Virus record (IMG/VR): IMGVR_UViG_3300044796_000662
Location: 248,001 to 312,000 of that record
Direction: 5' to 3' (one strand)
DNA: 64,000 nt
Below, in pieces: positions 21,512-53,325 of this stretch. The position numbers were made by a program, and so were the translations under genes. Below the pieces are notes generated by a model. That model searched no databases. It was not told where the DNA came from and saw only the letters and a list, made by a program, of their open reading frames with translations. Numbering within the stretch: position 1 is the first letter of the stretch; every line of letters begins with the position of its first letter.

Positions 21512-23176
21512 TTACCAGCTCTTGTTGGAGCGGGTCTGCTTGAGGGACTTCTTGGACGACGCCTTGTCCTGTGACTTGGCGTCGCTCTTGCTCGTTTCGT
21601 GAGCGGGGACAGGTGCGGGAGGCGTAGGCGGTGCAGTGACACCGACCACGGCCGGAATGGCAGGCGAGGCCGTAACGCCCCCGAGGTCACCCGAGAAGGG
21701 TGAGCTGCCGCCAACCCATGCGGGGTTGCCCTGGAGGTTGATGCTGCTGTCAGCGATCCAGGTGACCGGCTGGACAGCCGGTGCCACCACCGCTCCCGTG
21801 AGGGAGGGCTGGACCACGGAGCCAGAGCCCGTGAAGGATGCCGAGGTCGTCGTCTGCGACGATGTGCTCGTCATGACGCCGAGTTCCTGGAGATCGTAGT
21901 CCGCGCCGGCCGAGTAGGACGCGACGCCGACGCCGCGGGTGACCCCGCGTTCGAAGCTCTTGAGGTAGCCATTGTTCTGCACGTAGAGCGACGCGCTGGC
22001 CATCTTGCCGCCGATGTTGGACGAAGCGGCTGCGAGCTTCTCACGTCCCCGGCGCTTGAAGTCGTTCGCCCGGTGCTCCATGACCGCCGCTGCGGCCGCG
22101 TAGTCGCCGCGCTTGGCCTGCGACTCGGCTTCGAGCTGCGAGCGTACGAGCTGCGCGAGACCCACGATGTCATCGAGGGTGGCGTCAAGCTTCTTGTCCT
22201 CGTCGCCCTCCTTGACGAACTGCACGCGGCCCTTGGACTCGACCGTGTGCGTCTCCTTCTTGCCCTGCGCGTCGAAGGTCTGGAAGGTTGCCTTGACGTC
22301 GAAGACGTTGACAGCGCGGGGACCGTGAGCCTTCTGCTTGGCCATCTTGACGGCGACCACAAGATGGCGCGTCTCCTCGGCGAGCAGGTCGGGCACGTTG
22401 ATGTAGACCTCACCCGTGTTCTCTTCGTCCACGTCCACGTCCGAGATGACCTTCTCGACGGAGTGACCGTTGAGCGGCTTCAACTCGATGCGGACGTCAG
22501 TCGCGTACGTCGAGATGAGCCCTCCCAGCTCGGTCCCGAACGCCTGGAGGGCCTTGTCCGGGTCCTCCACGTGTGCGTAGTTACCCTTGCCCTCCTTGGC
22601 GAATTCCGTCAGGAAGTCCGGCGAGAAGTCCGTGCCGCTGCCGTAGCCGAAGGCACTGGCAGTCACGTGCTCGGCGTTGGCCTTGAGCAGCTTGATGATC
22701 TCGGCGGGCTCCTTCGCGGGACCGACGTTCGCCTGACCGTCCGTGAACATGATCACGCGGTGGATGTAGCTGCCGTTGAGATCGAGGTTCTTGAGCAGGT
22801 CGATGCTCTTGAGCATCCCGCCCGAGAAGTTGGTCATCCCGCTCGTGGTGAGCCCCTGGACAGCCTTACGGAACTCGTCCTTGTGGCCTTCGAGGCGTTG
22901 AGGCGCCGCGACCACTCGAACCTGCGAGTCGAAGGTCACGACGCCGAAGACGTCGTCACCCTTCATGTGCTCGATCATCTTGAGCACGCTCTGCTTGGCG
23001 TACTCCAGCTTGGGGCCTGCCATCGACGAGCTGGTGTCGATGCACATGATGAGTGCGAGCTTGGGCCGGGTCTTCTCCGCGTTCACGGCGGGTGCGGTGA
23101 GCGTCAGAACGAGATGGGCGTCCGTCTCCTGATCGAAGCGGACCTTCTCTTGCGTGAGTCGAGTTACGAGCTTCAT
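21512..23176 (-). CDS. vWA (MIDAS) domain protein with low-complexity tail
   Basis: DTSSSM, GMTNF, FTDGQAN; start set at ATG 23176. Confidence 0.85.
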   Translation of the reverse strand: MKLVTRLTQEKVRFDQETDAHLVLTLTAPAVNAEKTRPKLALIMCIDTSSSMAGPKLEYAKQSVLKMIEHMKGDDVFGVVTFDSQVRVVAAPQRLEGHKDEFRKAVQGLTTSGMTNFSGGMLKSIDLLKNLDLNGSYIHRVIMFTDGQANVGPAKEPAEIIKLLKANAEHVTASAFGYGSGTDFSPDFLTEFAKEGKGNYAHVEDPDKALQAFGTELGGLISTYATDVRIELKPLNGHSVEKVISDVDVDEENTGEVYINVPDLLAEETRHLVVAVKMAKQKAHGPRAVNVFDVKATFQTFDAQGKKETHTVESKGRVQFVKEGDEDKKLDATLDDIVGLAQLVRSQLEAESQAKRGDYAAAAAVMEHRANDFKRRGREKLAAASSNIGGKMASASLYVQNNGYLKSFERGVTRGVGVASYSAGADYDLQELGVMTSTSSQTTTSASFTGSGSVVQPSLTGAVVAPAVQPVTWIADSSINLQGNPAWVGGSSPFSGDLGGVTASPAIPAVVGVTAPPTPPAPVPAHETSKSDAKSQDKASSKKSLKQTRSNKSW

Positions 23177-23403
23177 TGGTTGTCTCCGTACACGGTTTCG
23201 GTTCGGTCTCGCCGGATGCGGAGCTGGACGTGCTCCCAAATCACGACTGCCTTAGCGATCGTCCTCAGCTTCCCCAAACCCTTGCGGGCGCGGTCGGCTG
23301 TACAGAGACCGTCCCGGCGTGCCGGGCAAGTCCAAACCCTTTTGGGCGCGACTCGATCTCTTCGCACTTCTTACACCATTGGGCCCTTGTGCGCAAGAGC
23401 CAG

Positions 23404-25492: not shown

Positions 25493-25515
25493 GTTCATCC
25501 TCATCTGGGTTGTAG

Positions 25516-25899
25516 TGGAGCTGGGCGGAATCGAACCGCCGTCTCCAAGAACGTCCTGACCGTCGTTTACGATGCGTAGCCTGATCCTCAGGCGGGATCC
25601 CCTCTGAACCTCGGGGCGGGTTTGCAAGCCATCGCTCTTGCGAGCTGGGAGACGTGCGGCCCTAGACCCTCAGAATGCTCGCTCCCTCATTGGGTCAAAG
25701 GCGGGGAGCCCAGCCTCAAGGGGTTGACGATTCTAGTGATCAGGTTGAGGCGCCCTGATCGAATCGGCTCAGGCCGCGCGGGCCTGGGCGACGCCGTTGT
25801 CGTTGGCAGGTATTTCGCCTCGATTTATTTGAGCGGGTCGAGGAGCCCGCTTACACGTAGACGATCGTTCGGTTCCCGGATCGAAACCAGGGCAGCCCC
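25516..25899 (-). ncRNA. ssrA: tmRNA, tag (A)ANDNGVAQARAA at 25769-25807
   Basis: 5' GGGGCTG / 3' CAGCTCCA acceptor with G3.U70, T arm, internal ANDN...AA* tag. Confidence 0.95.
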
Positions 25900-29265: not shown

Positions 29266-29337
29266 TGGTACGGGAGGAGGGAGTCGAACCCACTCATCCG
29301 GCTTGTAGGGCCAGTGCCTCGCCTTGAGGTCCCCCGC
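29266..29337 (-). tRNA. Atypical tRNA-Val(TAC)
   Basis: Loop CCTACAA (C33), short connector, CCA. Confidence 0.65.
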
Positions 29338-29351
29338 GCATGAAGTGAAGT

Positions 29352-29425
29352 TGGCTGGGGAGGAAGGAATCGAACCCTCATAGGCAGAGCCAGAATCTGC
29401 TGTCCTACCGTTGGACGACTCCCCA
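29352..29425 (-). tRNA. tRNA-Gln(CTG)
   Basis: Canonical, loop TTCTGGC. Confidence 0.9.
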
Positions 29426-32434: not shown

Positions 32435-33166
32435 TTACGAGGCCAACTCGTGCCAGCGTGCTGCCAGCATCCTTGCGTGACTCACGACCGGCAGGCCGTA
32501 TCCTCCGAAGGACATCCCGTCGTTGGCCTCGACCAAGAGGGTCCGGCCGTCCGCCGTGACCCCCCAATCGAGGCAGCACGCAGCCGGCGCGACCTTCTTG
32601 TACTGCTTCCAGGCGGCCTCAACGACCTTGCGGTCCGGGGCCACCCCCCAGTCGCCCTTGTACTTGCGGCAGTCGATGATGGTCTCGTAAAGCTGAAAGG
32701 CTCTGTACTCGACCACGAACTCGACCGGATCCGAGACCCACACGGGCATCTCGTCGGTCTGCGTGACGACCCGCATGCGTGACTCGCGGTCGGCTCTCCA
32801 GACGAACCCCGTGAACGCCTTGTGCTCCTGCGGCTTGACGAAGATGGGCTCGACCATGTTGCGGACCTCGCCGAGCGTCGCCTGACGGACGTTGCGGCCG
32901 AGGAACTCGCGCAGCTCCTCCGGGTAGTCGAGAGGCGGCGGGATGGGCTTGCCGAGCTTCCTGAGACCGTTCCAAACGTCCCCGAGCCATCCGGCCACAC
33001 CGACCTCAGGTCCAAGGTCTTCCACCTTGTCGATGTCGTCAGGCCAGTAGAAGGGCACCGTCTCGACGTTGAGCTTGTCCATCCCGAGCCAGGCCGAGTA
33101 CAGCACCTCTGTCTCCGGATGCTGCTCACGGTAGCGGATGTAGAACTTCCGCGCCTTGATGTCCAT
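32435..33166 (-). CDS. ATP-grasp fold protein
   Basis: DYPEEL, FVKP, EYRAF, LDWG, LVEANDG. Confidence 0.75.
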   Translation of the reverse strand: MDIKARKFYIRYREQHPETEVLYSAWLGMDKLNVETVPFYWPDDIDKVEDLGPEVGVAGWLGDVWNGLRKLGKPIPPPLDYPEELREFLGRNVRQATLGEVRNMVEPIFVKPQEHKAFTGFVWRADRESRMRVVTQTDEMPVWVSDPVEFVVEYRAFQLYETIIDCRKYKGDWGVAPDRKVVEAAWKQYKKVAPAACCLDWGVTADGRTLLVEANDGMSFGGYGLPVVSHARMLAARWHELAS

Positions 33167-39995: not shown

Positions 39996-40013
39996 ATGGC
40001 TCCCCGAGTTAGT

Positions 40014-40374
40014 GAAGTGAGCGTATAAGCCGAGTTCTGTTCCCCGTTACCGGGTGATGATCATTCCTCTAGGCCCACCGTTGCCGATGGGCTCAAGCAG
40101 TCAACCCGGGGGTATCGGCCGGACGCGCCACCCCCTGCATGACCTTGCTCCCGGTGAGGTTTGCCTTGCGACCGATGTTACCACCGGCCCGGTGGGCTCT
40201 TACTCCACCCTTGCACCCTTACCTGATCCCCTTGCGGGGCCATCGGCGGTCTTCTCTCTGTTGCACTTTCTGTCGGGTCACCCCGCCCGGCCGTTAGCCG
40301 GCACCGTGTCCAGTGGAGCCCGGACTTTCCTCCCGCTGTCGTACTGACCAGCCGGCGACCATCTCACTCACTTC
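40014..40374 (-). ncRNA. rnpB: RNase P RNA (bacterial type A)
   Basis: GAGGAAAGTCCGGGCTC, GAAAGTGCAACAGA, GGCAAACC, ACAGAACTCGGCTTA; P1 GAAGTGAG/CTCACTTC. Confidence 0.95.
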
Positions 40375-42499: not shown

Positions 42500-42573
42500 G
42501 GTGAGCGGCGGGAATCGAACCCAGCGTAGACAGGGCCACAACCTGTTGCCTGAACCACTCGGCTACGCCCACC
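42500..42573 (-). tRNA. tRNA-His(GTG)
   Basis: G-1:C73, loop TTGTGGC. Confidence 0.92.
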
Positions 42574-42851
42574 ATACAGACAGAGAAAGGCGCACGCCGC
42601 CTACCGCGCGAACGTGCAACCCCACATGACCTTAGAGACGGTAGCTCGGTCCGGCGGATTGCCAGACCCATACACCGTCGAAGAGTTGGGGTTGGAGACG
42701 CGCTGGCCTAGCGCGCACTTACCGCTCCGGCGATCTGACCGAAGCCCCTCGGTATTCGTCCCCGGTCCCCCTTGCAAGGACCAGGTCCGCGCATCCCGAC
42801 GTGTAGAGCGGTGGTCAAGGGCCAGAGCACTACACTTTTGTCGGGGATTTG

Positions 42852-42982
42852 TGCCGCTCCCAGGAATCGAACCTGGAACTTGTATGCACGCCGGATGGTC
42901 CCCTCTCACAGGGACGAGATGGCAGGCAGGTTGCTTTTTGTTCGCGTTAAAGGTGCGAGTGGACAACCTTGTCCAGAGCGGC
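42852..42982 (-). ncRNA. tRNA-module chimera F (module in variable loop)
   Basis: Acceptor GCCGCTC/GAGCGGC, T arm, insert ...ATCTC-GTCCC..GGGAC-CATCC...TACAAG. Confidence 0.75.
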
Positions 42983-42990
42983 AGAAACTA

Positions 42991-43091
42991 GACCACATCC
43001 GAGGTGACGGAGCTGGGGGTGACCGACGCCCACTCCGGGGCGTCGGTCTGTCCTTTCCAGGGCTTGTGAGATCCGTCGAGAGGATGCGGTC
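42991..43091 (-). ncRNA. Module-only Y-like RNA H (no tRNA body)
   Basis: GACCGCATCC/GGATGTGGTC stem, TCTC/ACCTC loop, GACGGA/TCCGTC stem, CACAAGC. Confidence 0.7.
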
Positions 43092-43093
43092 GG

Positions 43094-43230
43094 AGCCGGG
43101 TCTCGGAGTCGAACCGAGAATGCTTGTGCGGACTGCGGGGAGCTTCCTTGCGGAAGCGAGGGGCAGACCTGGGTTGAGCTTGCGCTCCTCCGTGGAAGGG
43201 AGGTGACGGACCGACCGTCTGTAACCCGGC
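43094..43230 (-). ncRNA. tRNA-module chimera E (anticodon TCC)
   Basis: Acceptor GCCGGGT/ACCCGGC, D, anticodon and T arms, insert CTC-GCTTCC-GCAA-GGAAGC...CACAAGC. Confidence 0.75.
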
Positions 43231-43247
43231 ATGTGACAGTGAAGTTA

Positions 43248-43379
43248 GGAAGCGTCCGAGGTGTAGTGCGGGGTTTTGGCGCAATAGGCGGGAGTTGAAC
43301 CCGCAACTGTCAGCTTCGAAGGCTGATGCTCAACCATTGAGCATCTCTTGCATGTGCGCGCTACGGGTTGGACGTTTCC
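43248..43379 (-). ncRNA. Module D wrapped around tRNA-Arg(TCG)
   Basis: GGAAACGTCC/GGACGCTTCC, AACCC/ACCTC loop, GTAGCGCG/CGCACTAC, CACAT. Confidence 0.65.
43277..43351 (-). tRNA. tRNA-Arg(TCG) embedded in module D
   Basis: Loop CTTCGAA, GCCA end. Confidence 0.8.
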
Positions 43380-43381
43380 AG

Positions 43382-43490
43382 AGGGGCTTGCCGGAATCGA
43401 ACCGGCGAAGATCTTGTAGGCACTCAAGATGCCTCCTTGCGGAGGCGAGTGCGAGAGCCGTTCAGTTTGGGCGCCATGCCCAAAAGCCCC
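43382..43490 (-). ncRNA. tRNA-module chimera C (no anticodon arm)
   Basis: Acceptor GGGGCTT/AAGCCCC, T arm, CTC-GCCTCC-GCAA-GGAGGC...TACAAG. Confidence 0.72.
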
Positions 43491-43519
43491 AGAGGACAGT
43501 GACAGAAGATAAGTAGCAG

Positions 43520-43644
43520 AGACGGGTGAAGGAGTCGAACCTTCCAAGCTTGTAGACGCACGTGGCGGCTCCCTTGCGGGAGCGAGAGTGAGCGTCGGAT
43601 GTATCTCTTATGAGGAGAAGCGGGACCCACGTCCCTTACCCGTC
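43520..43644 (-). ncRNA. tRNA-module chimera B (anticodon CAT)
   Basis: Acceptor GACGGGT/ACCCGTC, loop CTCATAA, CTC-GCTCCC-GCAA-GGGAGC...TACAAGC. Confidence 0.75.
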
Positions 43645-43652
43645 ATGATTTC

Positions 43653-43791
43653 CCCCGCGTTCGAGTGACTGAGGCTTGTGCGTTGTGATCGTCCTTCAAA
43701 CGATTGCCTTACCATTTGGCTACGGTTCCCGAAGGAATCGACGGGATTCGAACCCGCATTGCTTGTGAGCCTCAACCTGATGAGCGCGAGG
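43653..43791 (-). ncRNA. Circularly permuted YrlA-like RNA G
   Basis: Order: module stem, CACAAGC, T arm, acceptor closed by TTCG, D arm, anticodon arm (GAA), module stem with CTCG. Confidence 0.8.
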
Positions 43792-43794
43792 TAG

Positions 43795-43923
43795 GGGGCA
43801 TTCCAGGAATCGAACCTGGGCTTGTAAGAACCGCGGGGGCTCCCTTTCGGGAGCGAGTTGCGGTGCTGATTCACGTGACCTGTTTTTCAGACAGATTGAG
43901 GAACCAACCTCGGTGAATGCCCC
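43795..43923 (-). ncRNA. tRNA-module chimera A (anticodon GAA)
   Basis: Acceptor GGGCATT/AATGCCC, loop CTGAAAA, CTC-GCTCCC-GAAA-GGGAGC...TACAAGC. Confidence 0.75.
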
Positions 43924-43959
43924 GTGCGCGGGATGAACACATCCCGTATTGCGTGTGAG

Positions 43960-43992
43960 AAGTTACGTGAAGTGGTCTTGACTGTCAAGACC
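43960..43992 (-). promoter_or_regulatory. Sigma70-type promoter with palindromic operator over -35, driving the ncRNA array
   Basis: TTGACA-N17-TAACTT; perfect palindrome GGTCTTGAC-A-GTCAAGACC at 43974-43992. Confidence 0.7.
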
Positions 43993-44003
43993 GTTTATGG
44001 GGG

Positions 44004-44579
44004 TCAGATGCGGATTGTGCCCGCTGGGGACACACTGAAGCCGATCTTCTGCCCGGTTGCGAAGTAGACCTTGATCGCGTGCGCGATGTACGCGCTCGTG
44101 ATGGCAAGGAACGGAAGATGCTCCCCGTTCTCGCAGGTCGCCGCGCTCGTGTTGGACTCGTCGTCGATGACGAAGTCCTCGTCCCAGACGACGCGTCCGA
44201 ACTGCCCGTCCGGCGCCACAGCCCCGTGCAGGCACGGGAGCTTGTTGGCTCGAACGAAGGTCTGGATGACCCGGCGCGAGGCGCCGTTGTCGAGGCAGTC
44301 GAGCACGAGGTCGCTCTTGCCGAGCAGCTCCTTGACGTTGTCGGCGACGAGCTTGTTGCCGTTCGTCTCGATCTTCGTGCCGAAGAGGAAGTTCATCGTC
44401 TGCTTCACGGCCTCGACCTTCGCCTTGCGGAGATGAGTCTTGCCGTGGAACTGGCTCTGCGTGTTCTTCTGCTCGACGTGATCGAAGTCGATGACCTTGA
44501 TGGCCACCTCGACGTTGCGGATGAACTGCACGACGTGGGAGCCGAGCGCTCCGACGCCGACGATGGTGATGTTCTTCAT
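44004..44579 (-). CDS. ThiF/E1-like adenylating enzyme
   Basis: GVGALGS, IDFDHVEQKN, K..K, DCLDN..SR, candidate catalytic Cys ATCE. Confidence 0.9.
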   Translation of the reverse strand: MKNITIVGVGALGSHVVQFIRNVEVAIKVIDFDHVEQKNTQSQFHGKTHLRKAKVEAVKQTMNFLFGTKIETNGNKLVADNVKELLGKSDLVLDCLDNGASRRVIQTFVRANKLPCLHGAVAPDGQFGRVVWDEDFVIDDESNTSAATCENGEHLPFLAITSAYIAHAIKVYFATGQKIGFSVSPAGTIRI

Positions 44580-44636
44580 CTGGATGCCTCCGTGTACCGT
44601 GGCCATGATACGTACCATGACCACGGTACTTGGTGG

Positions 44637-44909
44637 TCAGCTACCGAACGGCGTCTTCGGCCTGATCTGGATCAGGTTGAACGGACGCTGCTCGTTCGGA
44701 CGGAAGCGGTCCACCACGAAGTCGGTGAAGTCCACGTCCGCGTCAGCGCGGATGCCGGGCACGCTGCCGTTGGTGACAGCCTCCGTGATCCACTGCTTGA
44801 TGTCACCCTCGGTCGCGTCGAACGGCGCCGGGTTCGGGAGGTCGCCGTTCTGGCCCCTCCAGGTGATGTTGACACGTGCCTCGTGAGCGAGGATGTCGTT
44901 CTGGTTCAT
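44637..44909 (-). CDS. Ubiquitin-like (beta-grasp) protein, C-terminus PKTPFG-S
   Basis: 90 aa, SD AGGAGG, beta-grasp-like pattern, near-terminal Gly, between JAB and E1. Confidence 0.7.
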   Translation of the reverse strand: MNQNDILAHEARVNITWRGQNGDLPNPAPFDATEGDIKQWITEAVTNGSVPGIRADADVDFTDFVVDRFRPNEQRPFNLIQIRPKTPFGS

Positions 44910-45319
44910 GACGTTGCCTCCTTCTGATCTGATCGCGCGGTTTGAATCATGAGCGAGTGGGCGCGCAGCTCCACAAGCCATCCAGGCTCGTCCTGAACGA
45001 CGAAGCGTTGGTAGTCGTACTTTCCAGGCCCCGACCAGCGGGCCACGATGATGCGGTCGGAGCTGGTGATCCACCACTCCAAGCGCCGGTCGAGTGCCTG
45101 CTCCACTGCGTGGAAGGTTGTCACATCCGTCCACGACGGCCTGGGCATGCCCGAGCCGGGGTGGCTGTGTGCGAACCCGAGCAGGTTGTCTCGGTTGTCC
45201 CAGAGGACGTCCCACAGCTTGCGGCTGTCAGGAAGAGAACCGCCCGTGCGGTCTTCCGGAAGGTGCCAGTAGATGGGCTCCCCCTTAAGGTTGACCACCA
45301 CTCCTGCTTCGATCGTCAT
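44906..45319 (-). CDS. JAB/MPN+ metallopeptidase
   Basis: N-terminal E, HSHP...PSWTD (JAMM motif). Confidence 0.88.
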   Translation of the reverse strand: MTIEAGVVVNLKGEPIYWHLPEDRTGGSLPDSRKLWDVLWDNRDNLLGFAHSHPGSGMPRPSWTDVTTFHAVEQALDRRLEWWITSSDRIIVARWSGPGKYDYQRFVVQDEPGWLVELRAHSLMIQTARSDQKEATS

Positions 45320-45489
45320 GGGCGTCCCCGCTTCTGTTCGAGCCAGGCTTGGGCAGCGTCGCCGACGAGCGCGTTCTTCTGAGCCCACTGCTTCAGGCTC
45401 AGACCACTGCCCTCTTCCTTCCAACGTCGGATGAGGCGTTGACGCTCGCGGCGACCCAGACCCTTGCTCTTCTCTTCGTCAGTCCTCAT
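45316..45489 (-). CDS. 57-aa hypothetical protein (not in ORF track)
   Basis: MRTDEEKSKG...LKQWAQKN...GRP*; ATGA-coupled to JAB. Confidence 0.55.
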   Translation of the reverse strand: MRTDEEKSKGLGRRERQRLIRRWKEEGSGLSLKQWAQKNALVGDAAQAWLEQKRGRP

Positions 45490-46426
45490 CGACGTGCCGG
45501 AAGACGACGAGGCGTCTTTCCTTATCTGCTTGGTGGATTACACCGGGCAGAGACTCCAACGTGAAGTAGTTGTCTCCGCGCTCTCCGGTGCCGTGATCGA
45601 TCAGACAGATCCCAGCGTCGATGATCCTGAGGGTCTGAGCGTCACATACGCACTCGAAACGGCGCCGCAGCATGCGGTAGACCACCACCATCTCGTTGCG
45701 CTTACCTGCACGCCTGTGGTCAAGGTACTCGGCACCGCCAACGGCCAGAGCCGCACGCGCTGCCTCTCCGAAGTCTTCCTTGGCCATGTCGCGACGGCCC
45801 TGTGCGTTGCCGAGCTGCTCGAAGAGCTTCAGGCGACGTTCTTCACGTGCCAGGCGCTCCTCTTCCTCTCGACGCTGCCGCTCAAGCTCCTCACGCCGGC
45901 GCTGAGCCTCGATGCGCTGGTAGGCTTCCATGCGGAAAGCCGCGTCCAGAGCAGGCGCAACGCCCGCGATCATGTTCACCGACTCCTTCTGGTCGAAGAA
46001 CGACTTGAGCACCTCCTCTTCGGGGCCGAGCGGCATCTCCTGCCGCGCGTACACGAGAGGGCCGCCCTCATGCGTCCGTCCCGCGCTGACGCGAGCGAAC
46101 CTGTCGAGTCCCGGTTCGACGAGGAAGACAGGCTCCGAAGAGGCTGCGATCTTCGCCGGATTGGGATCGACTCGAACATCGTCTGCGATGAAGCGGTCTC
46201 CGACGAGGTACCCGCTCTTGAGATGGCGGAGCGACTCGACGGCGGCTTCGGCTTCCTTGCCGAAGGTCGCCTCACGGCTCTTCAGGTGGAAGGTGTACCA
46301 CCCGTGCTCGGGCGGCCTCTTCCCCTTGACCCGCCACGTACGCTCCCCGGCTCGGAGTTCGTTGTCTCCGACCCACGGCGCGACGAGGGTCTCGTCCGCC
46401 GCTTGAAGCAGATCCCTCCAGCCCAT
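45479..46426 (-). CDS. Putative divergent E2-like protein
   Basis: Coiled-coil linker, then DAGICL...FTLESLPGVI resembling the UBC GxICL...TL..VL core; operon context. Confidence 0.5.
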   Translation of the reverse strand: MGWRDLLQAADETLVAPWVGDNELRAGERTWRVKGKRPPEHGWYTFHLKSREATFGKEAEAAVESLRHLKSGYLVGDRFIADDVRVDPNPAKIAASSEPVFLVEPGLDRFARVSAGRTHEGGPLVYARQEMPLGPEEEVLKSFFDQKESVNMIAGVAPALDAAFRMEAYQRIEAQRRREELERQRREEEERLAREERRLKLFEQLGNAQGRRDMAKEDFGEAARAALAVGGAEYLDHRRAGKRNEMVVVYRMLRRRFECVCDAQTLRIIDAGICLIDHGTGERGDNYFTLESLPGVIHQADKERRLVVFRHVDED

Positions 46427-46503
46427 GGTCATCCTCATGTGGCAGGACAGAGGCGCACCGCCTTGCGAGCGATGCGCCCCGTCTCTGCTAGTAAGGAAGC
46501 GGC

Positions 46504-48399
46504 TCAGGCAGCCCAGGCGGGCTTGACGAGCAGCTTCGTGTTGACGATCTCGTCCACGAGCGAGACGCGCTGCGGAGCAACGGCCACGTTCGTGATGCCA
46601 ACCGGCGTCGCTGCGATGAGGTTGCGGATCGCACGCGGAATCGCGTACGGGTCCACGCGCCCATCCTGCGCGAGGTTGGCGAAGATCCGGTCGTCGATCG
46701 GCAGGCACGGGATGCCGAGCTGCGCCGCCGTATCACGGACAGCGCGGTCGCCTTCCCCACCGCCGACCTTCAGAAGACCGAACGCGATCGGGTTGATGCC
46801 CGAGTTGCGAACGTGCGGCATGAAGGCAGGAGCCTGCTCGTCGCCGACGAAGATCATGATGGCATCTTCACCCGGCCCCGGCTTGCGATCCTGGAGAGCA
46901 CGGACACCCTCACCGTACGAGGTACCACCGTTCGCGGCGATGCCGCGGAAGGCGTTCTCGATGCCGGCAGCCGATGCGTGCTTGATCTCGATGCGGCGCC
47001 CCGCCGTGTTGAAGACGGACACGTGCAGCTTGTCCAGCGGGAATGCCTGGAGGAACTGCGCGATGTACTTCTTCGCGGTCGGGATGCTGTTCACCATCGA
47101 GCCCGAGATGTCCAGGATGAAGTAGATGACGAGGCCCTTCATGACCTCGACGACCGCCTTCTGGAGCGCCTTGTCCGCGCCCTCCTGGAGCTTCTCCTTC
47201 ACTTCCTTGGACTTGACGCGCGTCGCGATGTTCGCCGCACGCATGTCCTCGGAAGCCGCATTCGCCTTCTCCCACCGCTCACGGACGTCCTGGACCTGCA
47301 TGAGGCCCAGCTCCTCGATGGTGGGAGTCAGGATGACGAGGTCCTTGTTCGAGAGCGAACCGGCCTCGATTGCGGCCGTCAGGATGGCCCGCGTCACACC
47401 GTTCGGCAGCATACCGACGATGCGCTTGTAGTTCGGGCGGTCCTTGACGATCCTCTCGCAGATCTGCTCCTCGGAGAGACCGACCCACGTTTCGGCTGCC
47501 TCGACGGCCTGGCCGATGGCCAGGGTCCTGCGACCATCCTTCGCCTGCGCCTGCTTCCAGCGCAACGTTTCGAAGAACTTCGTCGTGGTCGGCTTGTACC
47601 CGACGCGACGCGCGAGGTCCATGACGGTCTGACGGAAGCCAGCCTTCACGAGCCCTTCGAGCAGCTTCGGGTTCTCCTCACGGAAGAGGAGCCACTTCTC
47701 GACCGCCTTCTCCCAGCGACCGAGGAACGGCCTACGAGCCGACTTGCCGAACCCAAGCTCGCGGTTGATGGCCGCGACGCCAGGGAGCATGAGCACGTCG
47801 TACACGCGGAGCAGGAGCTTCGGGTTGAAGTCCTTGCCGTCCTTCGTGTGGAGCAGCATCATCGCCTCGCCGATGTCCCTGTAGTCCTCGTCGTGGAAGG
47901 CGACCTTCTTGCCGCCGTTCTCGGTATCGAGGACCGGGTCACCCTTGCGCGTCTGGACGAGCATGAGGGCGGCCAGGATCACCTTGAGGTCGCGGTGCTC
48001 CTGCTTGAACGCGTAGCTCGCCCAGTGGGCAGCGAACTCGTTGTCCTTCGCGTAGACGTCCGCAGCCTGCCGGTACATCCAGGTCGCGACCTCCGGGAAG
48101 ATGCCGGCCGAGCGGTACTCGCCGATGATGTTCCCGTTGTCCGCCTTGATCTGGTAGCCGTTGTCGGCCAGCGTGCCGACCTTGACCTTCGTGGTCTTCC
48201 GGCCGACCTTGTTGACCTGGTAGACGACCTTCTTCTTGTCGTCACCCTCGACCTTGTGGGTCACGGGGGTCCAGCGGACCCCGATCCTTGCGGACGGGTC
48301 GCGCACGACCATGCCAGGACGGTTGTGGACCATGTGGTCCGTGTAGCCGATGAGGGTCTGGATGATCCCCTCGGCAGCGCTCAGGTTTTCCTTGTCCAT
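46504..48399 (-). CDS. Ro60/TROVE-like helical domain plus C-terminal vWA protein
   Basis: 631 aa; helical N-part (KDNEFAAHWASYA), MIDAS DISGS...GGTS...GDEQ; start set at ATG 48399 because upstream is tRNA. Confidence 0.7.
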   Translation of the reverse strand: MDKENLSAAEGIIQTLIGYTDHMVHNRPGMVVRDPSARIGVRWTPVTHKVEGDDKKKVVYQVNKVGRKTTKVKVGTLADNGYQIKADNGNIIGEYRSAGIFPEVATWMYRQAADVYAKDNEFAAHWASYAFKQEHRDLKVILAALMLVQTRKGDPVLDTENGGKKVAFHDEDYRDIGEAMMLLHTKDGKDFNPKLLLRVYDVLMLPGVAAINRELGFGKSARRPFLGRWEKAVEKWLLFREENPKLLEGLVKAGFRQTVMDLARRVGYKPTTTKFFETLRWKQAQAKDGRRTLAIGQAVEAAETWVGLSEEQICERIVKDRPNYKRIVGMLPNGVTRAILTAAIEAGSLSNKDLVILTPTIEELGLMQVQDVRERWEKANAASEDMRAANIATRVKSKEVKEKLQEGADKALQKAVVEVMKGLVIYFILDISGSMVNSIPTAKKYIAQFLQAFPLDKLHVSVFNTAGRRIEIKHASAAGIENAFRGIAANGGTSYGEGVRALQDRKPGPGEDAIMIFVGDEQAPAFMPHVRNSGINPIAFGLLKVGGGEGDRAVRDTAAQLGIPCLPIDDRIFANLAQDGRVDPYAIPRAIRNLIAATPVGITNVAVAPQRVSLVDEIVNTKLLVKPAWAA

Positions 48400-48520
48400 C
48401 TTCGATCCGATCTCGGCCCCCGCACATGGGGCCGCGTCGCTACATACACCGCTCGGTGTGCGGACCCCCAGATTGAGGGTCGAGTTTCCGAACGGTGGTT
48501 GAGCGCGACGATGCGCTCGG

Positions 48521-48593
48521 GGTGACGTACGGGAATCGAACCCGCCAGAGACCGATTCACAGTCGGCCGTGTTCGCCAGCTCACTCACGCCAC
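48521..48593 (-). tRNA. tRNA-His(GTG)
   Basis: Loop CTGTGAA, C73. Confidence 0.82.
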
Positions 48594-48595
48594 AG

Positions 48596-48669
48596 TCGGG
48601 GTGACAGGACTCGAACCTGCGAAAAACGTGCACCCAAAGCACGCGCACTAGCCGCTATGCGACACCCCG
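48596..48669 (-). tRNA. tRNA-Pro(TGG)
   Basis: Loop TTTGGGT. Confidence 0.9.
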
Positions 48670-48694
48670 AAGTACCTATCGACCCCCTTACACC

Positions 48695-48955
48695 ATGGGG
48701 TCTGTCATCCACCGAGTCGCTGCACGGTTCGCCTTCAAGTACGAGCCGAAGGAGACCAAGCAGCACAGGGCAGAAAAGCTGCGCGACGCCATCCGCGAGG
48801 CCACCGGGCTCTCCAGGGGGATGAGCGAGGCCATCGCAGATGCCGTCGTTCGTGGACGCGAGGTCGAACGCCTCGCGCTTCAGAAGAGCTGGCCCATCGA
48901 GGACGGGGTCATCATCGGACCGTCCGGGCAGTTGCCTCTTCAGAACTTGACCTAA
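48695..48955 (+). CDS. Hypothetical protein with RVAARF tag
   Basis: MGSVIHRVAARFAFKY. Confidence 0.7.
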   Translation: MGSVIHRVAARFAFKYEPKETKQHRAEKLRDAIREATGLSRGMSEAIADAVVRGREVERLALQKSWPIEDGVIIGPSGQLPLQNLT

Positions 48956-48960
48956 GGGTT

Positions 48961-49136
48961 TGTCGCGCCCGAGTGGAAGGAGCCGGATGCCTTTCGGCTG
49001 GATTCCATTTCCAGTGCGTCTACCATTTCGCCACTCGCCCAGGTTGTAGAGCCTTGCGGCTCAGTGGGCGAGGCAGGATTCGAACCTGCATATCCCTTGC
49101 GGGATGCTTGTGGGATCCCTCGATGAGGGCGCGACA
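48961..49136 (-). ncRNA. Circularly permuted YrlA-like RNA I
   Basis: TGTCGCGCCC/GGGCGCGACA, TCATC/CACTC loop, CACAAGC, T arm, closed acceptor, Leu-type D arm, anticodon arm. Confidence 0.8.
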
Positions 49137-52499: not shown

Positions 52500-53252
52500 T
52501 CACGGCGCGAAGACGAAATCGAAGATGGGCTTGCCGGCGGACAGATCCTTCGGCACGTCGTGGCTGTTGGCGGTCTCCTTGGCCTGCTTGACCGCGTGCT
52601 GGAGCTTCTCGATCCGAGCGAGCAGGAGATCCTTCTGGTCCATCGGCATCGCCCCGGAATACTTGATGGTCTTCCAGGTGCCGGTGATCTTGTCCTCCGT
52701 AATGAGCTGGACCTGCGCCGGGTGCTCCTTCGAGCCCGGGTGCATCACGAGAGGCACCTGGAGCTTCTTCGTGCGGACCGTCTCGGTCGGCTGCGTCGCG
52801 TAGAGGCTCTGCTCCTTGTCGAGCGTCCACTTCTCGGCCGGGTCGAGCGTCGGCATCTTCTTGACCTCCGTGTAGAGGTCGTCGAGCTGGTGCCCGAGCC
52901 AGAGCAGGTACGTGACCGGGGCATCCTTCAGGATCGTCTTGCCCTCCACGACCACGTCCGCCTTCGCGGAGCAGTTCGTGACGTCGCGCTGGAAGGTCAT
53001 GTCGAACAGCTCGGTCTGCTCCTTCTGAATGGTCTTCAGGAGGACGGCCGTGTTCTGCTGGACGTTCTGGCGCTCGTCCGGCAGCATCTCGTGCAGGTTC
53101 GACTCCGGGTTCGCGTCGCGAGCCGACCACGTCTTCACGTGGCCGCTGAAAAGCGCCGGCTTCTGGAACGTGTGGTAGATGGCGGTCAGCTTCTCGGCCA
53201 CCTTCGTCTTGAGGCCCGACTCGATGGCAAGAACGTGATGCAGCTTCGACAT
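52500..53252 (-). CDS. Uncharacterised coiled-coil protein
   Basis: MSKLHHVLAIE...TNCSAKADVVVEG...LLARIEKLQHAVKQAKETAN. Confidence 0.8.
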   Translation of the reverse strand: MSKLHHVLAIESGLKTKVAEKLTAIYHTFQKPALFSGHVKTWSARDANPESNLHEMLPDERQNVQQNTAVLLKTIQKEQTELFDMTFQRDVTNCSAKADVVVEGKTILKDAPVTYLLWLGHQLDDLYTEVKKMPTLDPAEKWTLDKEQSLYATQPTETVRTKKLQVPLVMHPGSKEHPAQVQLITEDKITGTWKTIKYSGAMPMDQKDLLLARIEKLQHAVKQAKETANSHDVPKDLSAGKPIFDFVFAP

Positions 53253-53325
53253 GGTGGTCTCCGATCCGATTTGGGTCTGTGGGTCAGTAGTACACCGGAC
53301 CCCCACCCCTTCAGGACCGTCAACG

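What the first reader, a model, noticed from the sequence alone, without database searches (positions are those of the whole stretch)
42852..49136. Ubiquitin-like conjugation operon fused to a Ro60-like vWA protein and a family of nine tRNA-chimeric ncRNAs
Seen: one minus-strand run of vWA/TROVE-like (46504-48399), E2-like (45479-46426), a 57-aa ORF, JAB (44906-45319), Ubl (44637-44909) and ThiF/E1 (44004-44579). Eight related ncRNAs lie just downstream and a ninth just upstream (48961-49136). Established: Ro60 proteins are a helical ring plus vWA, are encoded next to their Y RNAs, and YrlA Y RNAs are permuted tRNA mimics; E1/E2/JAB/Ubl is the minimal ubiquitination set, as in bacterial Bil systems. 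Inference: this is a phage ribonucleoprotein in which a divergent Ro binds a shared RNA module and displays different tRNA bodies as bait or adaptors, for example for host anticodon nucleases, synthetases or ribosomes, so that the Ubl machinery can tag the captured protein or RNA. I know of no described system linking Ro/Y-like RNAs to Ubl conjugation.
Basis: partly seen in the sequence, partly recalled or inferred. Interest (0 to 1): 0.96.

Follow-up and report, generated by a model that had tools for sequence, protein, structure and literature searches.

The report
Phage Ro60-like RNP with Ubl genes
A clade of huge phages carries a conserved cassette: a very divergent Ro60-type RNA-binding ring protein, its own family of tRNA-derived RNAs in two circularly permuted forms, and a ubiquitin-like activation set. 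I found no description of this combination in the literature I could search.

Summary
Most of the RNAs are real.

- **Ro60-like protein (46504-48399).** It is a genuine but very divergent Ro60/TROVE homolog. Its helical part alone matches true TROVE domains (hhalign 95%, E 2.5e-8). It also has a vWA domain with a complete MIDAS motif.
- **RNAs.** Eight RNAs, not nine, share one covarying arm: P1, an internal loop with CUC, P2, then an ACAAG joiner before the T-arm.
  - Five are full tRNA cloverleaves carrying the arm.
  - Two are exact circular permutations with a closed acceptor stem, as in YrlA.
  - One is a minimal stem-loop version.
- **Ubl set.** The JAB peptidase, the ThiF-type E1 and an ~88-aa protein ending RPKTPFG (with or without a tail) all look active.
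- **"E2-like" protein.** It has no detectable UBC fold. It does keep one universally conserved cysteine.
- **Conservation.**
  - Gene order is collinear in about 60 of 69 huge-phage loci.
  - Key members persist in relatives of only 27-31% identity.
  - The RNAs lie directly after the E1 gene in 29 loci, or before the Ro60-like gene in about 11.

Ro60 with Y RNAs is a known kind of system. Its coupling to Ubl machinery and this RNA design are new. The bait-and-tag mechanism remains untested.

The parts
46504..48399 (-). Divergent Ro60/TROVE-family protein, 631 aa. Extra N-terminal beta domain (about 1-100), helical TROVE-like domain (about 102-420), and a vWA domain with a complete MIDAS motif (DxSxS 430-434, T493, D520).
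   Evidence: AF2 model pLDDT 78.6. Foldseek top hits are Ro60 structures 9kop, 1yvp and 9l5y and viral TROVE-size proteins. hhalign against true TROVE proteins: 98.6% full length, 95.2% (E 2.5e-8) for the helical part alone. Invariant MIDAS residues. More than 1780 homologs.
45479..46426 (-). N-terminal beta-barrels, a 49-residue helix, and a C-terminal alpha/beta domain. Cys274, just after the fourth strand, is the only cysteine kept in distant homologs.
   Evidence: Alignment A3. AF2 pLDDT 88.6. No PDB fold match. No Pfam, PADLOC, PHROG or NCBIfam hit. Distant homologs keep C274 but not C259.
45316..45489 (-). 57-aa basic ORF. Not a core member.
   Evidence: tblastn finds it in only 3 other loci (L003, L040, L060) of 69.
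44906..45319 (-). JAB/JAMM metallopeptidase, 137 aa, with the HxH...S..D motif conserved.
   Evidence: Pfam Prok-JAB. Conservation across 53 sequences.
44637..44909 (-). Ubl candidate, 90 aa. The conserved C-terminus RPKTPFG is followed by 0 to about 20 variable residues in most relatives. Some called ORFs run further, and their tails were not inspected.
   Evidence: C-termini of 60 orthologs. Alignment A6. Weak atlas leads to Prok_Ub and to a PB1-containing family. No Pfam or PDB hit.
44004..44579 (-). ThiF/MoeB-type E1 adenylating enzyme, 191 aa, single domain. GxGALGS, DCxDN and an invariant Cys149 are conserved.
   Evidence: Pfam ThiF 1e-22. PDB: MoeB 5e-10, then ThiF, TcdA and Uba4. NCBIfam ThiF, MoeB and UbaA, all below cut-off. 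Conservation.
43795..43923 (-). Unpermuted arm RNA U1. Full cloverleaf (anticodon GAA) with the P1-loop-P2 arm inserted before the T-arm.
   Evidence: Fold z -4.2. R1 69.8 bits. Weak tRNA-Sec hit caused by the long variable region. ARAGORN calls Phe(gaa) after arm excision.
43668..43792 (-). Permuted arm RNA P1. Order: ACAAGC, T-arm, acceptor stem closed by UUCG, D-arm, anticodon arm (GAA), then a 3' strand that pairs back to the 5' end.
   Evidence: Rfam YrlA 23.9 bits, below the gathering score of 69. R1 34.7 bits. The same topology is seen in 20 relatives.
43520..43645 (-). Unpermuted arm RNA U2 (anticodon CAU).
   Evidence: (69.2 bits).
43380..43492 (-). Unpermuted arm RNA U3. The body is reduced: one hairpin replaces the D and anticodon arms.
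   Evidence: 60.4 bits. Not called as a tRNA after arm excision.
43090..43232 (-). Unpermuted arm RNA U4 (anticodon UCC, with an extra small variable hairpin).
   Evidence: (74.9 bits).
42984..43092 (-). Minimal permuted version. Terminal stem, CUC loops, inner stem and CACAAGC are present, but a GC-rich hairpin replaces the tRNA body.
   Evidence: Fold z -4.5. Motif order read from the sequence. Missed by R1 because it has no T-arm.
42850..42985 (-). Unpermuted arm RNA U5 (9-nt anticodon loop).
   Evidence: 64.6 bits. ARAGORN calls Lys(ttt) after excision.
48966..49136 (-). Permuted arm RNA P2, upstream of the operon and directly after tRNA-Pro(CGG). It has an 8-bp closed acceptor stem with an inserted hairpin, a type-II D-arm, and a terminal stem GCGCCC/GGGCGC preceded by ACUCG.
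   Evidence: z -2.3; YrlA 17 bits; 28 bits.

Best explanation
This is a conserved cassette of a huge-phage clade. It encodes a divergent Ro60-type ribonucleoprotein together with a ubiquitin-like (Ubl) activation set.

**Shown**
- The 631-aa protein is a TROVE plus vWA/MIDAS homolog of Ro60.
- The adjacent RNAs are tRNA-derived and share one covarying arm: P1, an internal loop with CUC, P2, then YY-ACAAGC before the T-arm.
- The arm comes in two circularly permuted topologies. In one it is capped and the acceptor stem is open. In the other the arm is the terminal stem and the acceptor is closed.
- The JAB peptidase, the ThiF-type E1 (invariant Cys149) and an ~88-aa protein with a conserved C-terminal Gly and variable tails have the sequence marks of an active Ubl set.
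- A 315-aa protein with one universally conserved Cys always accompanies them.

**Inferred**
- The whole stretch from 48.4 to 42.6 kb is transcribed with the tRNA array. RNase P, whose RNA this phage encodes itself, and 3' trimming would then release the RNAs.
- The Ro60-like ring binds the shared arm, which takes the place of the terminal stem of Y RNAs.
- The exposed tRNA bodies, which carry many different anticodons, recruit tRNA-binding partners or clients, as Y RNA tethers Ro60 to PNPase.
- JAB trims the Ubl tail and E1 adenylates the Gly.
- The Ubl then passes to Cys274 of the 315-aa protein, which attaches it to a component or client of the RNP.

The likely purpose is control of tRNA/ncRNA metabolism or takeover of host RNA machinery during infection.
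For: **Ro60 homology**
- hhalign of a 49-sequence family alignment against 31 true TROVE proteins: 98.6%, E 7.6e-16, over query residues 103-521.
- The helical part alone against the TROVE part alone: 95.2%, E 2.5e-8, 243 columns.
- Foldseek top hits are Ro60 structures (9kop, 1yvp, 9l5y) with 513-583 aligned columns, and TROVE-size viral proteins in BFVD.
- The MIDAS residues are invariant.

**RNA family**
- Covariation supports the arm.
- 115 hits in 55 loci, all on the operon strand.
- The permuted forms fold consistently in 20 relatives.
- There are weak YrlA matches.
- The bodies are diverse tRNAs.

**Linkage**
- The gene order is collinear in about 60 of 69 loci.
- The first arm RNA lies 97-832 nt after the E1 stop in 29 loci, or within about 2 kb upstream of the Ro60-like gene in about 11.
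- In relatives at 27-31% identity: one locus keeps the Ro60-like gene, the 315-aa homolog, JAB and E1; another keeps an arm RNA, a 103-aa protein ending in Gly, the Ro60-like gene and the 315-aa homolog.
- No terminator-like site lies on the operon strand between E1 and the RNAs.

**Ubl set**
- RPKTPFG C-termini with variable tails.
- Conserved JAB and E1 motifs.

**Precedent**
- Ro60 genes next to tRNA-like Y RNAs in bacteria and phages (PMC4201824).
- Phage phiLo Ro60 binds phage-encoded Y-like RNAs and forms complexes with host PNPase in vitro (PMC12135203).
Against: - Pfam TROVE is not detected in any of 39 family members.
- With the shallow alignment A1, the helical part alone reached only 14%.
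- Foldseek TM-scores are low (0.2-0.26), because the domain arrangement of the model is uncertain (pTM 0.45). No ring has been demonstrated.
- The arm lacks the conserved Ro60-binding motif described for YrlA (GNCGAA, PMC4201824). Both YrlA matches are far below Rfam's threshold.
- The 315-aa protein has no recognisable E2 fold.
- The beta-grasp fold of the Ubl is not shown.
- There is no evidence of expression or processing. The one RNA run holds the region only as a flat contig.
- Six loci searched without filters show no full arm hit within the fetched flanks. In one of them E1 lies beyond the fetched piece.
Confidence: 0.55

Rival explanations
1. Sulfur relay. Ubl, E1 and JAB form a ThiS/MoaD/TtuB/SAMP-type sulfur-carrier system. 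The Ubl becomes a thiocarboxylate, and the 315-aa Cys protein acts as the sulfurtransferase on tRNAs or on the arm RNAs held by the Ro60-like scaffold. No protein conjugation is involved.
For: - The nearest relatives of the E1 are MoeB, ThiF, UbaA and Uba4, and the tRNA-acting E1-like enzyme TcdA.
- No UBC fold was found.
- The cassette sits inside tRNA arrays in nearly all loci.
- JAB combined with C-terminally extended carriers also occurs in sulfur pathways (CysO/Mec+, QbsE/QbsD; from my own knowledge).
- The N-terminal beta-barrels of the 315-aa protein give weak, non-significant matches to OB/S1-type RNA-binding domains.
Against: - No PP-loop thiolase, rhodanese or cysteine desulfurase lies in the cassette or among ten neighbouring ORFs.
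- The Ubl ends in F-G rather than the usual G-G.
- The E1 lacks a rhodanese domain.
- The vWA/MIDAS domain and the deep linkage to a Ro60-like protein have no role in known sulfur relays.
Confidence: 0.2
2. Two unrelated neighbours. A Ro60/Y-RNA module and a separate Ubl module, serving for example virion assembly or counter-defence, are only syntenic in a conserved core region.
For: - In several loci 1-5 kb of other genes separate the members. Examples are L003, L018, L025 and L029, and in Virus Rctr197k the E1 lies 7 kb from the Ro60-like gene.
- Canonical Ro60 genes such as that of phiLo have no ThiF or JAB neighbour.
- A paper on Nidhogg viruses lists a Ro60 and ThiF homologs without linking them (10.1101/2021.07.29.454249).
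Against: - The order is kept while the surrounding tRNA arrays are reshuffled.
- The association of the Ro60-like gene, the 315-aa protein, JAB and E1 persists at 27-31% identity, in a low-GC lineage, with a changed order.
- The arm RNAs flank the two ends of the cassette, so they bracket the Ubl genes.
Confidence: 0.13
3. Working tRNAs with a handle. The unpermuted RNAs are aminoacylated, decoding tRNAs whose extra arm only serves recognition by a phage factor, comparable to the long arm of tRNA-Sec.
For: - Complete cloverleaves with 7-bp acceptor stems.
- In the window the anticodon loops mostly have 7 nt with U33.
- ARAGORN accepts 46 of 59 after arm excision.
Against: - The permuted members have closed acceptor stems and cannot be charged as transcribed.
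- Many relatives have a non-U33 position, 6-, 8- or 9-nt anticodon loops, A34 anticodons and aberrant D-arms.
- In the window none of the five unpermuted RNAs encodes CCA after the discriminator base.
- The window already has ordinary tRNAs for the same anticodons.
- One member has lost its tRNA body altogether.
Confidence: 0.1

Closest known systems
Ro60-Y RNA ribonucleoproteins: bacterial Rsr with YrlA/Yrn1; Ro60 of mycobacteriophages; phiRo60 with Yrl1/Yrl2 of Thermus phage phiLo
   Same: - A TROVE helical domain followed by a vWA/MIDAS domain.
- The gene lies next to several small RNAs with tRNA-like domains.
- The permuted RNAs have the YrlA order: T-arm, closed acceptor stem, D-arm, and a terminal stem formed by the two RNA ends.
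- It occurs in phages.
   Different: - No Pfam TROVE hit, and an extra N-terminal beta domain.
- The RNAs keep a full anticodon arm. The terminal stem leaves the body at the variable region rather than replacing the anticodon stem.
- The conserved motifs are different (CUC and ACAAG, not GNCGAA).
- An unpermuted isomer with an open acceptor stem exists.
- There are up to 7 copies per locus, with many anticodons.
- The cassette is fixed to Ubl, E1, JAB and a Cys protein.
Bil (BilABCD) and type II CBASS Cap2/Cap3 bacterial ubiquitin-like conjugation
   Same: A small protein with a C-terminal Gly exposed by processing, a JAB peptidase, an E1-family adenylating enzyme with a conserved Cys, and a further Cys-bearing partner.
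   Different: - It is encoded by the phage, not by the host defence.
- The E1 is a 191-aa single ThiF/MoeB-type domain, not IAD-AAD-CYS and not an E2-E1 fusion.
- The partner shows no UBC fold.
- It is linked to an RNA-binding ring and to RNAs.
Ubl sulfur carriers: ThiS/ThiF, MoaD/MoeB, CysO/Mec+, TtuB/TtuC, SAMP/UbaA, Urm1/Uba4
   Same: The best sequence matches of the E1 fall here. The system has a small carrier with a C-terminal Gly, and JAB processing occurs in some of these pathways. Several of them act on tRNA.
   Different: No sulfur donor or thiolase gene lies nearby. The C-terminus is F-G rather than G-G. A vWA/TROVE partner is present.
Circularly permuted tRNA genes (Cyanidioschyzon merolae, Thermofilum) and type II tRNAs with long variable arms
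   Same: The 3' half precedes the 5' half and the acceptor ends are joined by a short spacer. An extra helix emerges between the anticodon stem and the T-stem.
   Different: The break point lies in the loop of a 40-60-nt conserved arm, not at a bulge-helix-bulge site. Both isomers coexist side by side in one phage. Nothing indicates that they mature into standard tRNAs.

Membership tests
Ro60/TROVE protein family | TROVE helical-repeat domain detectable by sequence | tested here: met
   Pfam TROVE is absent in 39 of 39 members. Profile-profile comparison of the helical part alone against the TROVE part of 31 Pfam-positive Ro60 proteins gives 95.2%, E 2.5e-8, 243 columns. With the shallow alignment it gave only 14%.
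Ro60/TROVE protein family | C-terminal vWA domain with a MIDAS motif | tested here: met
   VWA_2 hits in 39 of 39 members. DxSxS, T and D are invariant. vWA against Ro60 vWA: 96.4%.
Ro60/TROVE protein family | Closed ring (toroid) with a central cavity | tested here: inconclusive
   Ro60 structures are the top Foldseek hits with 513-583 aligned columns. TM is only 0.2-0.26 and the model's pTM is 0.45.
Ro60-Y RNA system | Y RNA genes adjacent to the Ro60 gene, at least one with a tRNA-like domain | tested here: met
   Eight arm RNAs flank the cassette in the window. Flanking is conserved in about 40 informative loci and in a relative at 27% identity.
Ro60-Y RNA system | The protein binds the RNA stem | not testable with these tools
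   Needs EMSA, RIP-seq or a structure.
YrlA RNA (Rfam RF02553) | Score at or above the family's gathering threshold (69 bits) | tested here: not met
   23.9 bits at 43676-43779 and 17.1 bits at 49016-49090. The topology is shared, but the Ro-binding stem and motifs are not.
tRNA | Recognised as a tRNA by ARAGORN or Rfam RF00005 as encoded | tested here: not met
   None of the arm RNAs is called. 46 of 59 are called only after in-silico removal of the arm.
Bil (BilABCD) ubiquitin-like conjugation | E2 with a UBC fold and a catalytic Cys | tested here: not met
   The model is confident (pLDDT 88.6), but no PDB match is better than E 0.2 and none of the 50 listed matches is a UBC protein. No Prok-E2 or UQ_con hit in 37 members. 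One conserved Cys lies after strand 4.
Bil (BilABCD) ubiquitin-like conjugation | [quoted passage not shown] | tested here: not met
   The E1 is 191 aa with a single ThiF domain.
Bil (BilABCD) ubiquitin-like conjugation | JAB/JAMM peptidase | tested here: met
   Prok-JAB hit, with the motif conserved in 53 sequences.
Ubiquitin-like proteins (beta-grasp) | Beta-grasp fold | tested here: inconclusive
   No Pfam or PDB sequence hit. Only weak atlas leads: Prok_Ub at 0.55 and a PB1-containing family at TM 0.57.
Ubiquitin-like proteins (beta-grasp) | Conserved C-terminal Gly, exposed directly or after processing | tested here: met
   RPKTPFG is followed by 0 to about 20 residues in most of the 60 orthologs. 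Nine of them end exactly at the Gly.
Ubl sulfur-carrier pathways | Sulfur donor (rhodanese or desulfurase) and acceptor enzyme (e.g. PP-loop thiolase) in the gene neighbourhood | tested here: not met
   None in the cassette, and none among ten neighbouring ORFs scanned. Host enzymes could substitute.

The most novel reading that the evidence does not exclude
The cassette is an RNA-guided ubiquitin-like tagging machine. Each tRNA-bodied RNA, held on the Ro60-like ring through the shared arm, presents a different tRNA mimic that captures a specific tRNA-binding protein, such as an anticodon nuclease, a synthetase or a modification enzyme. The Cys protein then transfers the Ubl onto the captured protein. 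Alternatively, the Ubl is esterified onto the open 3' end of the unpermuted RNAs, by analogy with aminoacylation chemistry. Either case would be the first link between Ro/Y RNPs and Ubl conjugation, and the first RNA-specified Ubl targeting.
Probability: 0.2. Interest if true: 0.95.

Novelty: new variant of a known kind. Interest (0 to 1): 0.85.

Why it matters
- **A new handle on Ro60 function.** What Ro60 and Y RNAs do outside a few model species is an open question. Here a whole clade of 200-600-kb phages keeps a Ro60-like gene as a highly conserved gene (more than 1780 homologs, 50-84% identical among those fetched or listed). It always comes with a Ubl activation set and with multiple tRNA-bodied RNAs.
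- **Testable partners.** The cassette offers a defined protein set and defined RNAs for asking what Ro-type rings do.
- **Ubl systems in viruses.** It suggests that Ubl chemistry is used by the phage itself, not only by bacterial defence.
- **A natural RNA experiment.** The same architecture exists as two circular permutations side by side. That informs how Y RNAs arose from tRNAs.
- **An annotation blind spot.** tRNA finders and Rfam miss all of these RNAs.

Tried and rejected
- **Near-identical phage DNA.** No match in GenBank phages. By protein, only Virus Rctr197k matched, at 56%.
- **Family libraries.** PHROGs, PADLOC and NCBIfam gave nothing for the Ro60-like protein, the 315-aa protein or the Ubl.
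- **PDB sequence searches with profiles.** Only vWA domains matched for the Ro60-like family. Nothing matched for the 315-aa protein or the Ubl.
- **ESM Atlas for the 315-aa protein.** Scores stayed at 0.59 or below, for the whole protein and for its C-terminal domain, so no lead.
- **Profile against the single phiLo Ro60 sequence.** Only 24%. The shallow-alignment split test gave 14% for the helical part. Both were superseded by the more diverse alignment.
- **Finding the phiLo genome.** I reached the record by trying neighbouring accession numbers.
- **Expression.** The only RNA run holds the region as one flat 13.9-kb contig piece. It gives no transcript ends and cannot be told apart from DNA carry-over.
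- **Arm as an intron.** Rejected. Removing it would leave a variable region of about 20 nt, and the permuted forms use the arm as their terminal stem.
- **Arm as a kink-turn or a known Rfam motif.** No Rfam family matches at E up to 5.
- **Promoter scan.** No sigma-70-like sites.

Full report
**Context.** The window belongs to a 363-kb IMG/VR contig of a huge phage from peat. Between 21 and 55 kb on the minus strand it carries 51 tRNA genes, a tmRNA and a class-A RNase P RNA. The finding lies inside this array.

**Observation.**
- Pfam sees only VWA_2 at the C-terminus of the 631-aa protein, Prok-JAB in the 137-aa protein and ThiF in the 191-aa protein. It sees nothing in the 315-aa, 57-aa and 90-aa products.
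- PHROGs, PADLOC and NCBIfam add only ThiF/MoeB/UbaA-type hits for the E1.

**Conservation of the gene set.**
- The 631-aa protein has more than 1780 homologs, many on contigs of 200-620 kb.
- In 69 IMG/VR loci fetched with it, the order vWA protein, 315-aa protein, JAB, Ubl candidate, E1 is collinear in about 60. In some loci 1-5 kb of other genes are inserted.
- The 57-aa ORF is found in only three other loci, so it is not a core member.
- The cassette is embedded in tRNA arrays whose content and order differ between loci.
- Two far relatives of the large protein (27-31% identity, low GC) keep the association.
  - One has the 315-aa homolog (E 4e-10), a JAB homolog and a ThiF E1 downstream, in a changed order.
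  - The other has a 103-aa protein ending in Gly, the large protein and the 315-aa homolog (E 4e-16).

**Is the large protein Ro60-like?**
- The AF2 model (pLDDT 78.6) has a beta domain (1-100), a helical domain (102-420) and a vWA domain.
- The MIDAS residues DxSxS, T and D are invariant.
- The best Foldseek matches in the PDB are Ro60 structures: phiLo 9kop at E 5e-7, Xenopus 1yvp, and 9l5y. The alignments span 513-583 columns but TM is low, 0.2-0.26.
- In BFVD the best matches are again 500-550-aa viral proteins, among them a named TROVE protein.
- No member hits Pfam TROVE.
- I located the phiLo Ro60 gene and collected 89 true TROVE proteins with it. I aligned 31 of them.
- With the shallow family alignment, hhalign gave 96.7% overall but only 14% for the helical part alone.
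- With 49 diverse representatives from the exhaustive search, the full-length match rose to 98.6% (E 7.6e-16). The helical part alone against the TROVE part alone reached 95.2% (E 2.5e-8, 243 columns).
- I therefore accept homology to Ro60, with an added N-terminal domain. A closed ring has not been shown.

**The RNAs.** Reading and folding the region shows three forms.
- **U-type.**
  - Five RNAs are complete cloverleaves.
  - Between the variable region and the T-stem they carry a 40-60-nt arm.
  - The arm is helix P1, an internal loop whose 5' side ends in CUC, and hairpin P2.
  - The 3' strand of P1 is followed by YY-ACAAGC.
- **P-type.**
  - Two RNAs are the same object circularly permuted.
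  - They start in the 3' strand of P2 and run through P1, ACAAGC, the T-arm and an acceptor stem closed by a loop.
  - They continue through the D-arm and anticodon arm, the 5' strand of P1 and ACUCG.
  - They end in the 5' strand of P2.
  - Twenty relatives fold in this way.
- **Minimal form.** One RNA (42984-43092) keeps the stems and both motifs but has a plain hairpin instead of a tRNA body.

Supporting results for the RNA family:
- In an alignment of 60 arms, P1, P2 and the T-stem covary: 87.7% paired against 62% in shuffles, score 0.73 against 0.25, 0 of 500 shuffles, and all slid controls at or below 0.23.
- P2 pairing was a selection criterion for that alignment. P1 pairing was not, so P1 is independent evidence.
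- A covariance model of the arm scores the five U-type RNAs at 60-75 bits and the two P-type RNAs at 35 and 28 bits. A weak candidate at 29276-29361 scores 20 bits. Ordinary tRNAs match only through their T-arm.
- Rfam has no family for these RNAs. The P-type RNAs give sub-threshold YrlA matches and the U-type RNAs give sub-threshold tRNA-Sec matches.
- After in-silico removal of the arm, ARAGORN of 59 U-type RNAs as tRNAs. There are 26 different anticodon calls. They include odd loop sizes and A34 anticodons.
- Many relatives lack U33.

**Linkage of the RNAs to the cassette.**
- The model finds 115 arms in 55 loci, all on the operon strand.
- Combined with the gene coordinates, the first arm RNA starts 97-832 nt after the E1 stop in 29 loci, mostly within 100-230 nt.
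- In about 11 other loci the arms lie within about 2 kb upstream of the Ro60-like gene.
- Six loci searched without filters show no full arm within the fetched flanks. In one of them E1 lies beyond the fetched piece.
- An exact-pattern scan of IMG/VR returned 106 stretches, of which 80 became loci. In 26 of the 80 the operon genes lie in the same piece. Most of the other model-verified arms come from contigs that carry the cassette elsewhere.
- The 27%-identity relative has an arm RNA (36 bits) right upstream of its cassette, on a contig where ARAGORN finds no tRNA at all. The linkage is therefore not a by-product of lying in a tRNA array.
- No terminator-like site lies on the operon strand between E1 and the RNAs. 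This is compatible with one transcription unit, but that is an inference.

**The Ubl set.**
- The 85-95-aa protein ends in a conserved RPKTPFG. Nine orthologs stop exactly at the Gly. Most others add 1 to about 20 unrelated residues, and a few called ORFs run further. That is the pattern of a carrier whose Gly is exposed by a peptidase.
- JAB keeps HxH...S..D. The E1 keeps GxGALGS, DCxDN and an invariant Cys149.
- The closest solved relatives of the E1 are MoeB, ThiF, TcdA and Uba4.
- The beta-grasp fold of the carrier is not shown.

**The "E2-like" protein.**
- The model is confident (pLDDT 88.6). It shows N-terminal beta-barrels, a 49-residue Arg/Glu-rich helix, and a C-terminal helix, four strands, loop and helix domain.
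- Foldseek finds nothing better than E 0.2 and no UBC protein among the 50 listed matches.
- No E2 family appears in 37 members even at E 10.
- Of the two cysteines invariant in the clade, only Cys274, in the loop after strand 4, survives in the distant homologs.
- An E2-like carrier role is possible. Membership of the E2 fold is not supported.

**Mechanism.**
- Shown: a Ro60 homolog, a covarying tRNA-derived RNA family in two permuted topologies, an apparently active Ubl/JAB/E1 set, and deep conservation of their linkage.
- Inferred: the ring binds the shared arm, as Ro60 binds the terminal stem of Y RNAs. The tRNA bodies recruit partners or clients, as Y RNA tethers Ro60 to PNPase (PMC4201824, PMC12135203). 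The Ubl, trimmed by JAB and adenylated by E1, is passed via Cys274 onto a component or client of the RNP.
- The permuted genes could have arisen from tandem copies of unpermuted ones, as proposed for algal permuted tRNA genes. In several loci a P-type RNA directly follows a U-type RNA.
- RNase P, whose RNA the phage encodes itself, might open the closed acceptor stems. This is speculation.

**Rivals.**
- A sulfur-carrier pathway for RNA thiolation fits the affinities of the E1 and the missing UBC fold. It lacks a donor and a thiolase nearby.
- Two independent neighbouring modules fits the insertions between genes. It is argued against by the deep conservation.
- Decoding tRNAs with a handle fits some U-type RNAs. 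It does not fit the P-type or minimal forms.

**Prior knowledge.**
- Ro60 with tRNA-like Y RNAs is known in bacteria and phages (PMC4201824, PMC12135203, PMC7824862).
- Bil, CBASS and Bub are host Ubl systems (PMC11601596).
- One paper on Asgard viruses lists a Ro60 and ThiF homologs in one virus group without connecting them (10.1101/2021.07.29.454249).
- My full-text searches found no description of this cassette or of these RNAs.

**Verdict.** The E2 label is not supported, and the tagging mechanism is open. This is a new variant of the Ro60-Y RNA kind. Interest 0.85.

Noticed in passing
window 40010-40374 (-), 25513-25899 (-), 21102-55336 (-): The phage encodes its own class-A RNase P RNA (299.5 bits, full length) and a tmRNA, besides 51 tRNA genes. 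All lie on one strand within 34 kb.
   Followed up: no
window 42573-42849 (-): About 270 nt of strongly structured non-coding sequence lies between the last arm RNA and tRNA-His (fold z -2.3 and -4.1). It has no arm motif and no Rfam match, and it ends in the only terminator-like site of the unit (42610-42588).
   Followed up: partly
window 29276-29361 (-): A weak arm-model hit (20 bits) with CUACAAGC followed by a T-arm lies between tRNA-Leu and tRNA-Gln, far from the cassette. It may be a degenerate arm RNA or an odd tRNA.
   Followed up: partly
window 21512-23239 (-), 32435-33166 (-), 52500-53306 (-): Other genes inside the tRNA array: a second, ordinary vWA protein (575 aa), an R2K-clade ATP-grasp enzyme, and a DUF7873 protein.
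   Followed up: no
L040:8866-9819 (+): The ortholog of the 315-aa protein in this locus contains one in-frame stop codon. It could be a pseudogene, a sequencing error or recoding.
   Followed up: no
L040:12466-12537, L045:4488-4562: ARAGORN calls 'tRNA-Asp(atc)' in places that fall inside or next to arm RNAs. Standard tRNA finders therefore mis-annotate parts of these RNAs.
   Followed up: no
L043:5275-5405 and others: Some arm RNAs in relatives carry stop-reading or unusual anticodons (UUA, UCA) or 8-nt anticodon loops.
   Followed up: no
L085:3149-4001: In another huge phage, five arm RNAs sit in a tight tandem cluster with no cassette gene in the fetched piece. The same contig carries the cassette (locus L020); how far apart the two lie was not determined.
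   Followed up: partly
L185:1-28: The public contig of the 27%-identity relative begins with what looks, from memory, like a sequencing-adapter sequence. This would be an assembly artefact at the contig end.
   Followed up: no
L001 (Virus Rctr197k, KX853510.1) 10935-11873: The GenBank record annotates a minus-strand hypothetical CDS where tblastn finds the plus-strand ortholog of the 315-aa protein (56% identity). The Ro60-like gene is annotated there only as a misc_feature.
   Followed up: no
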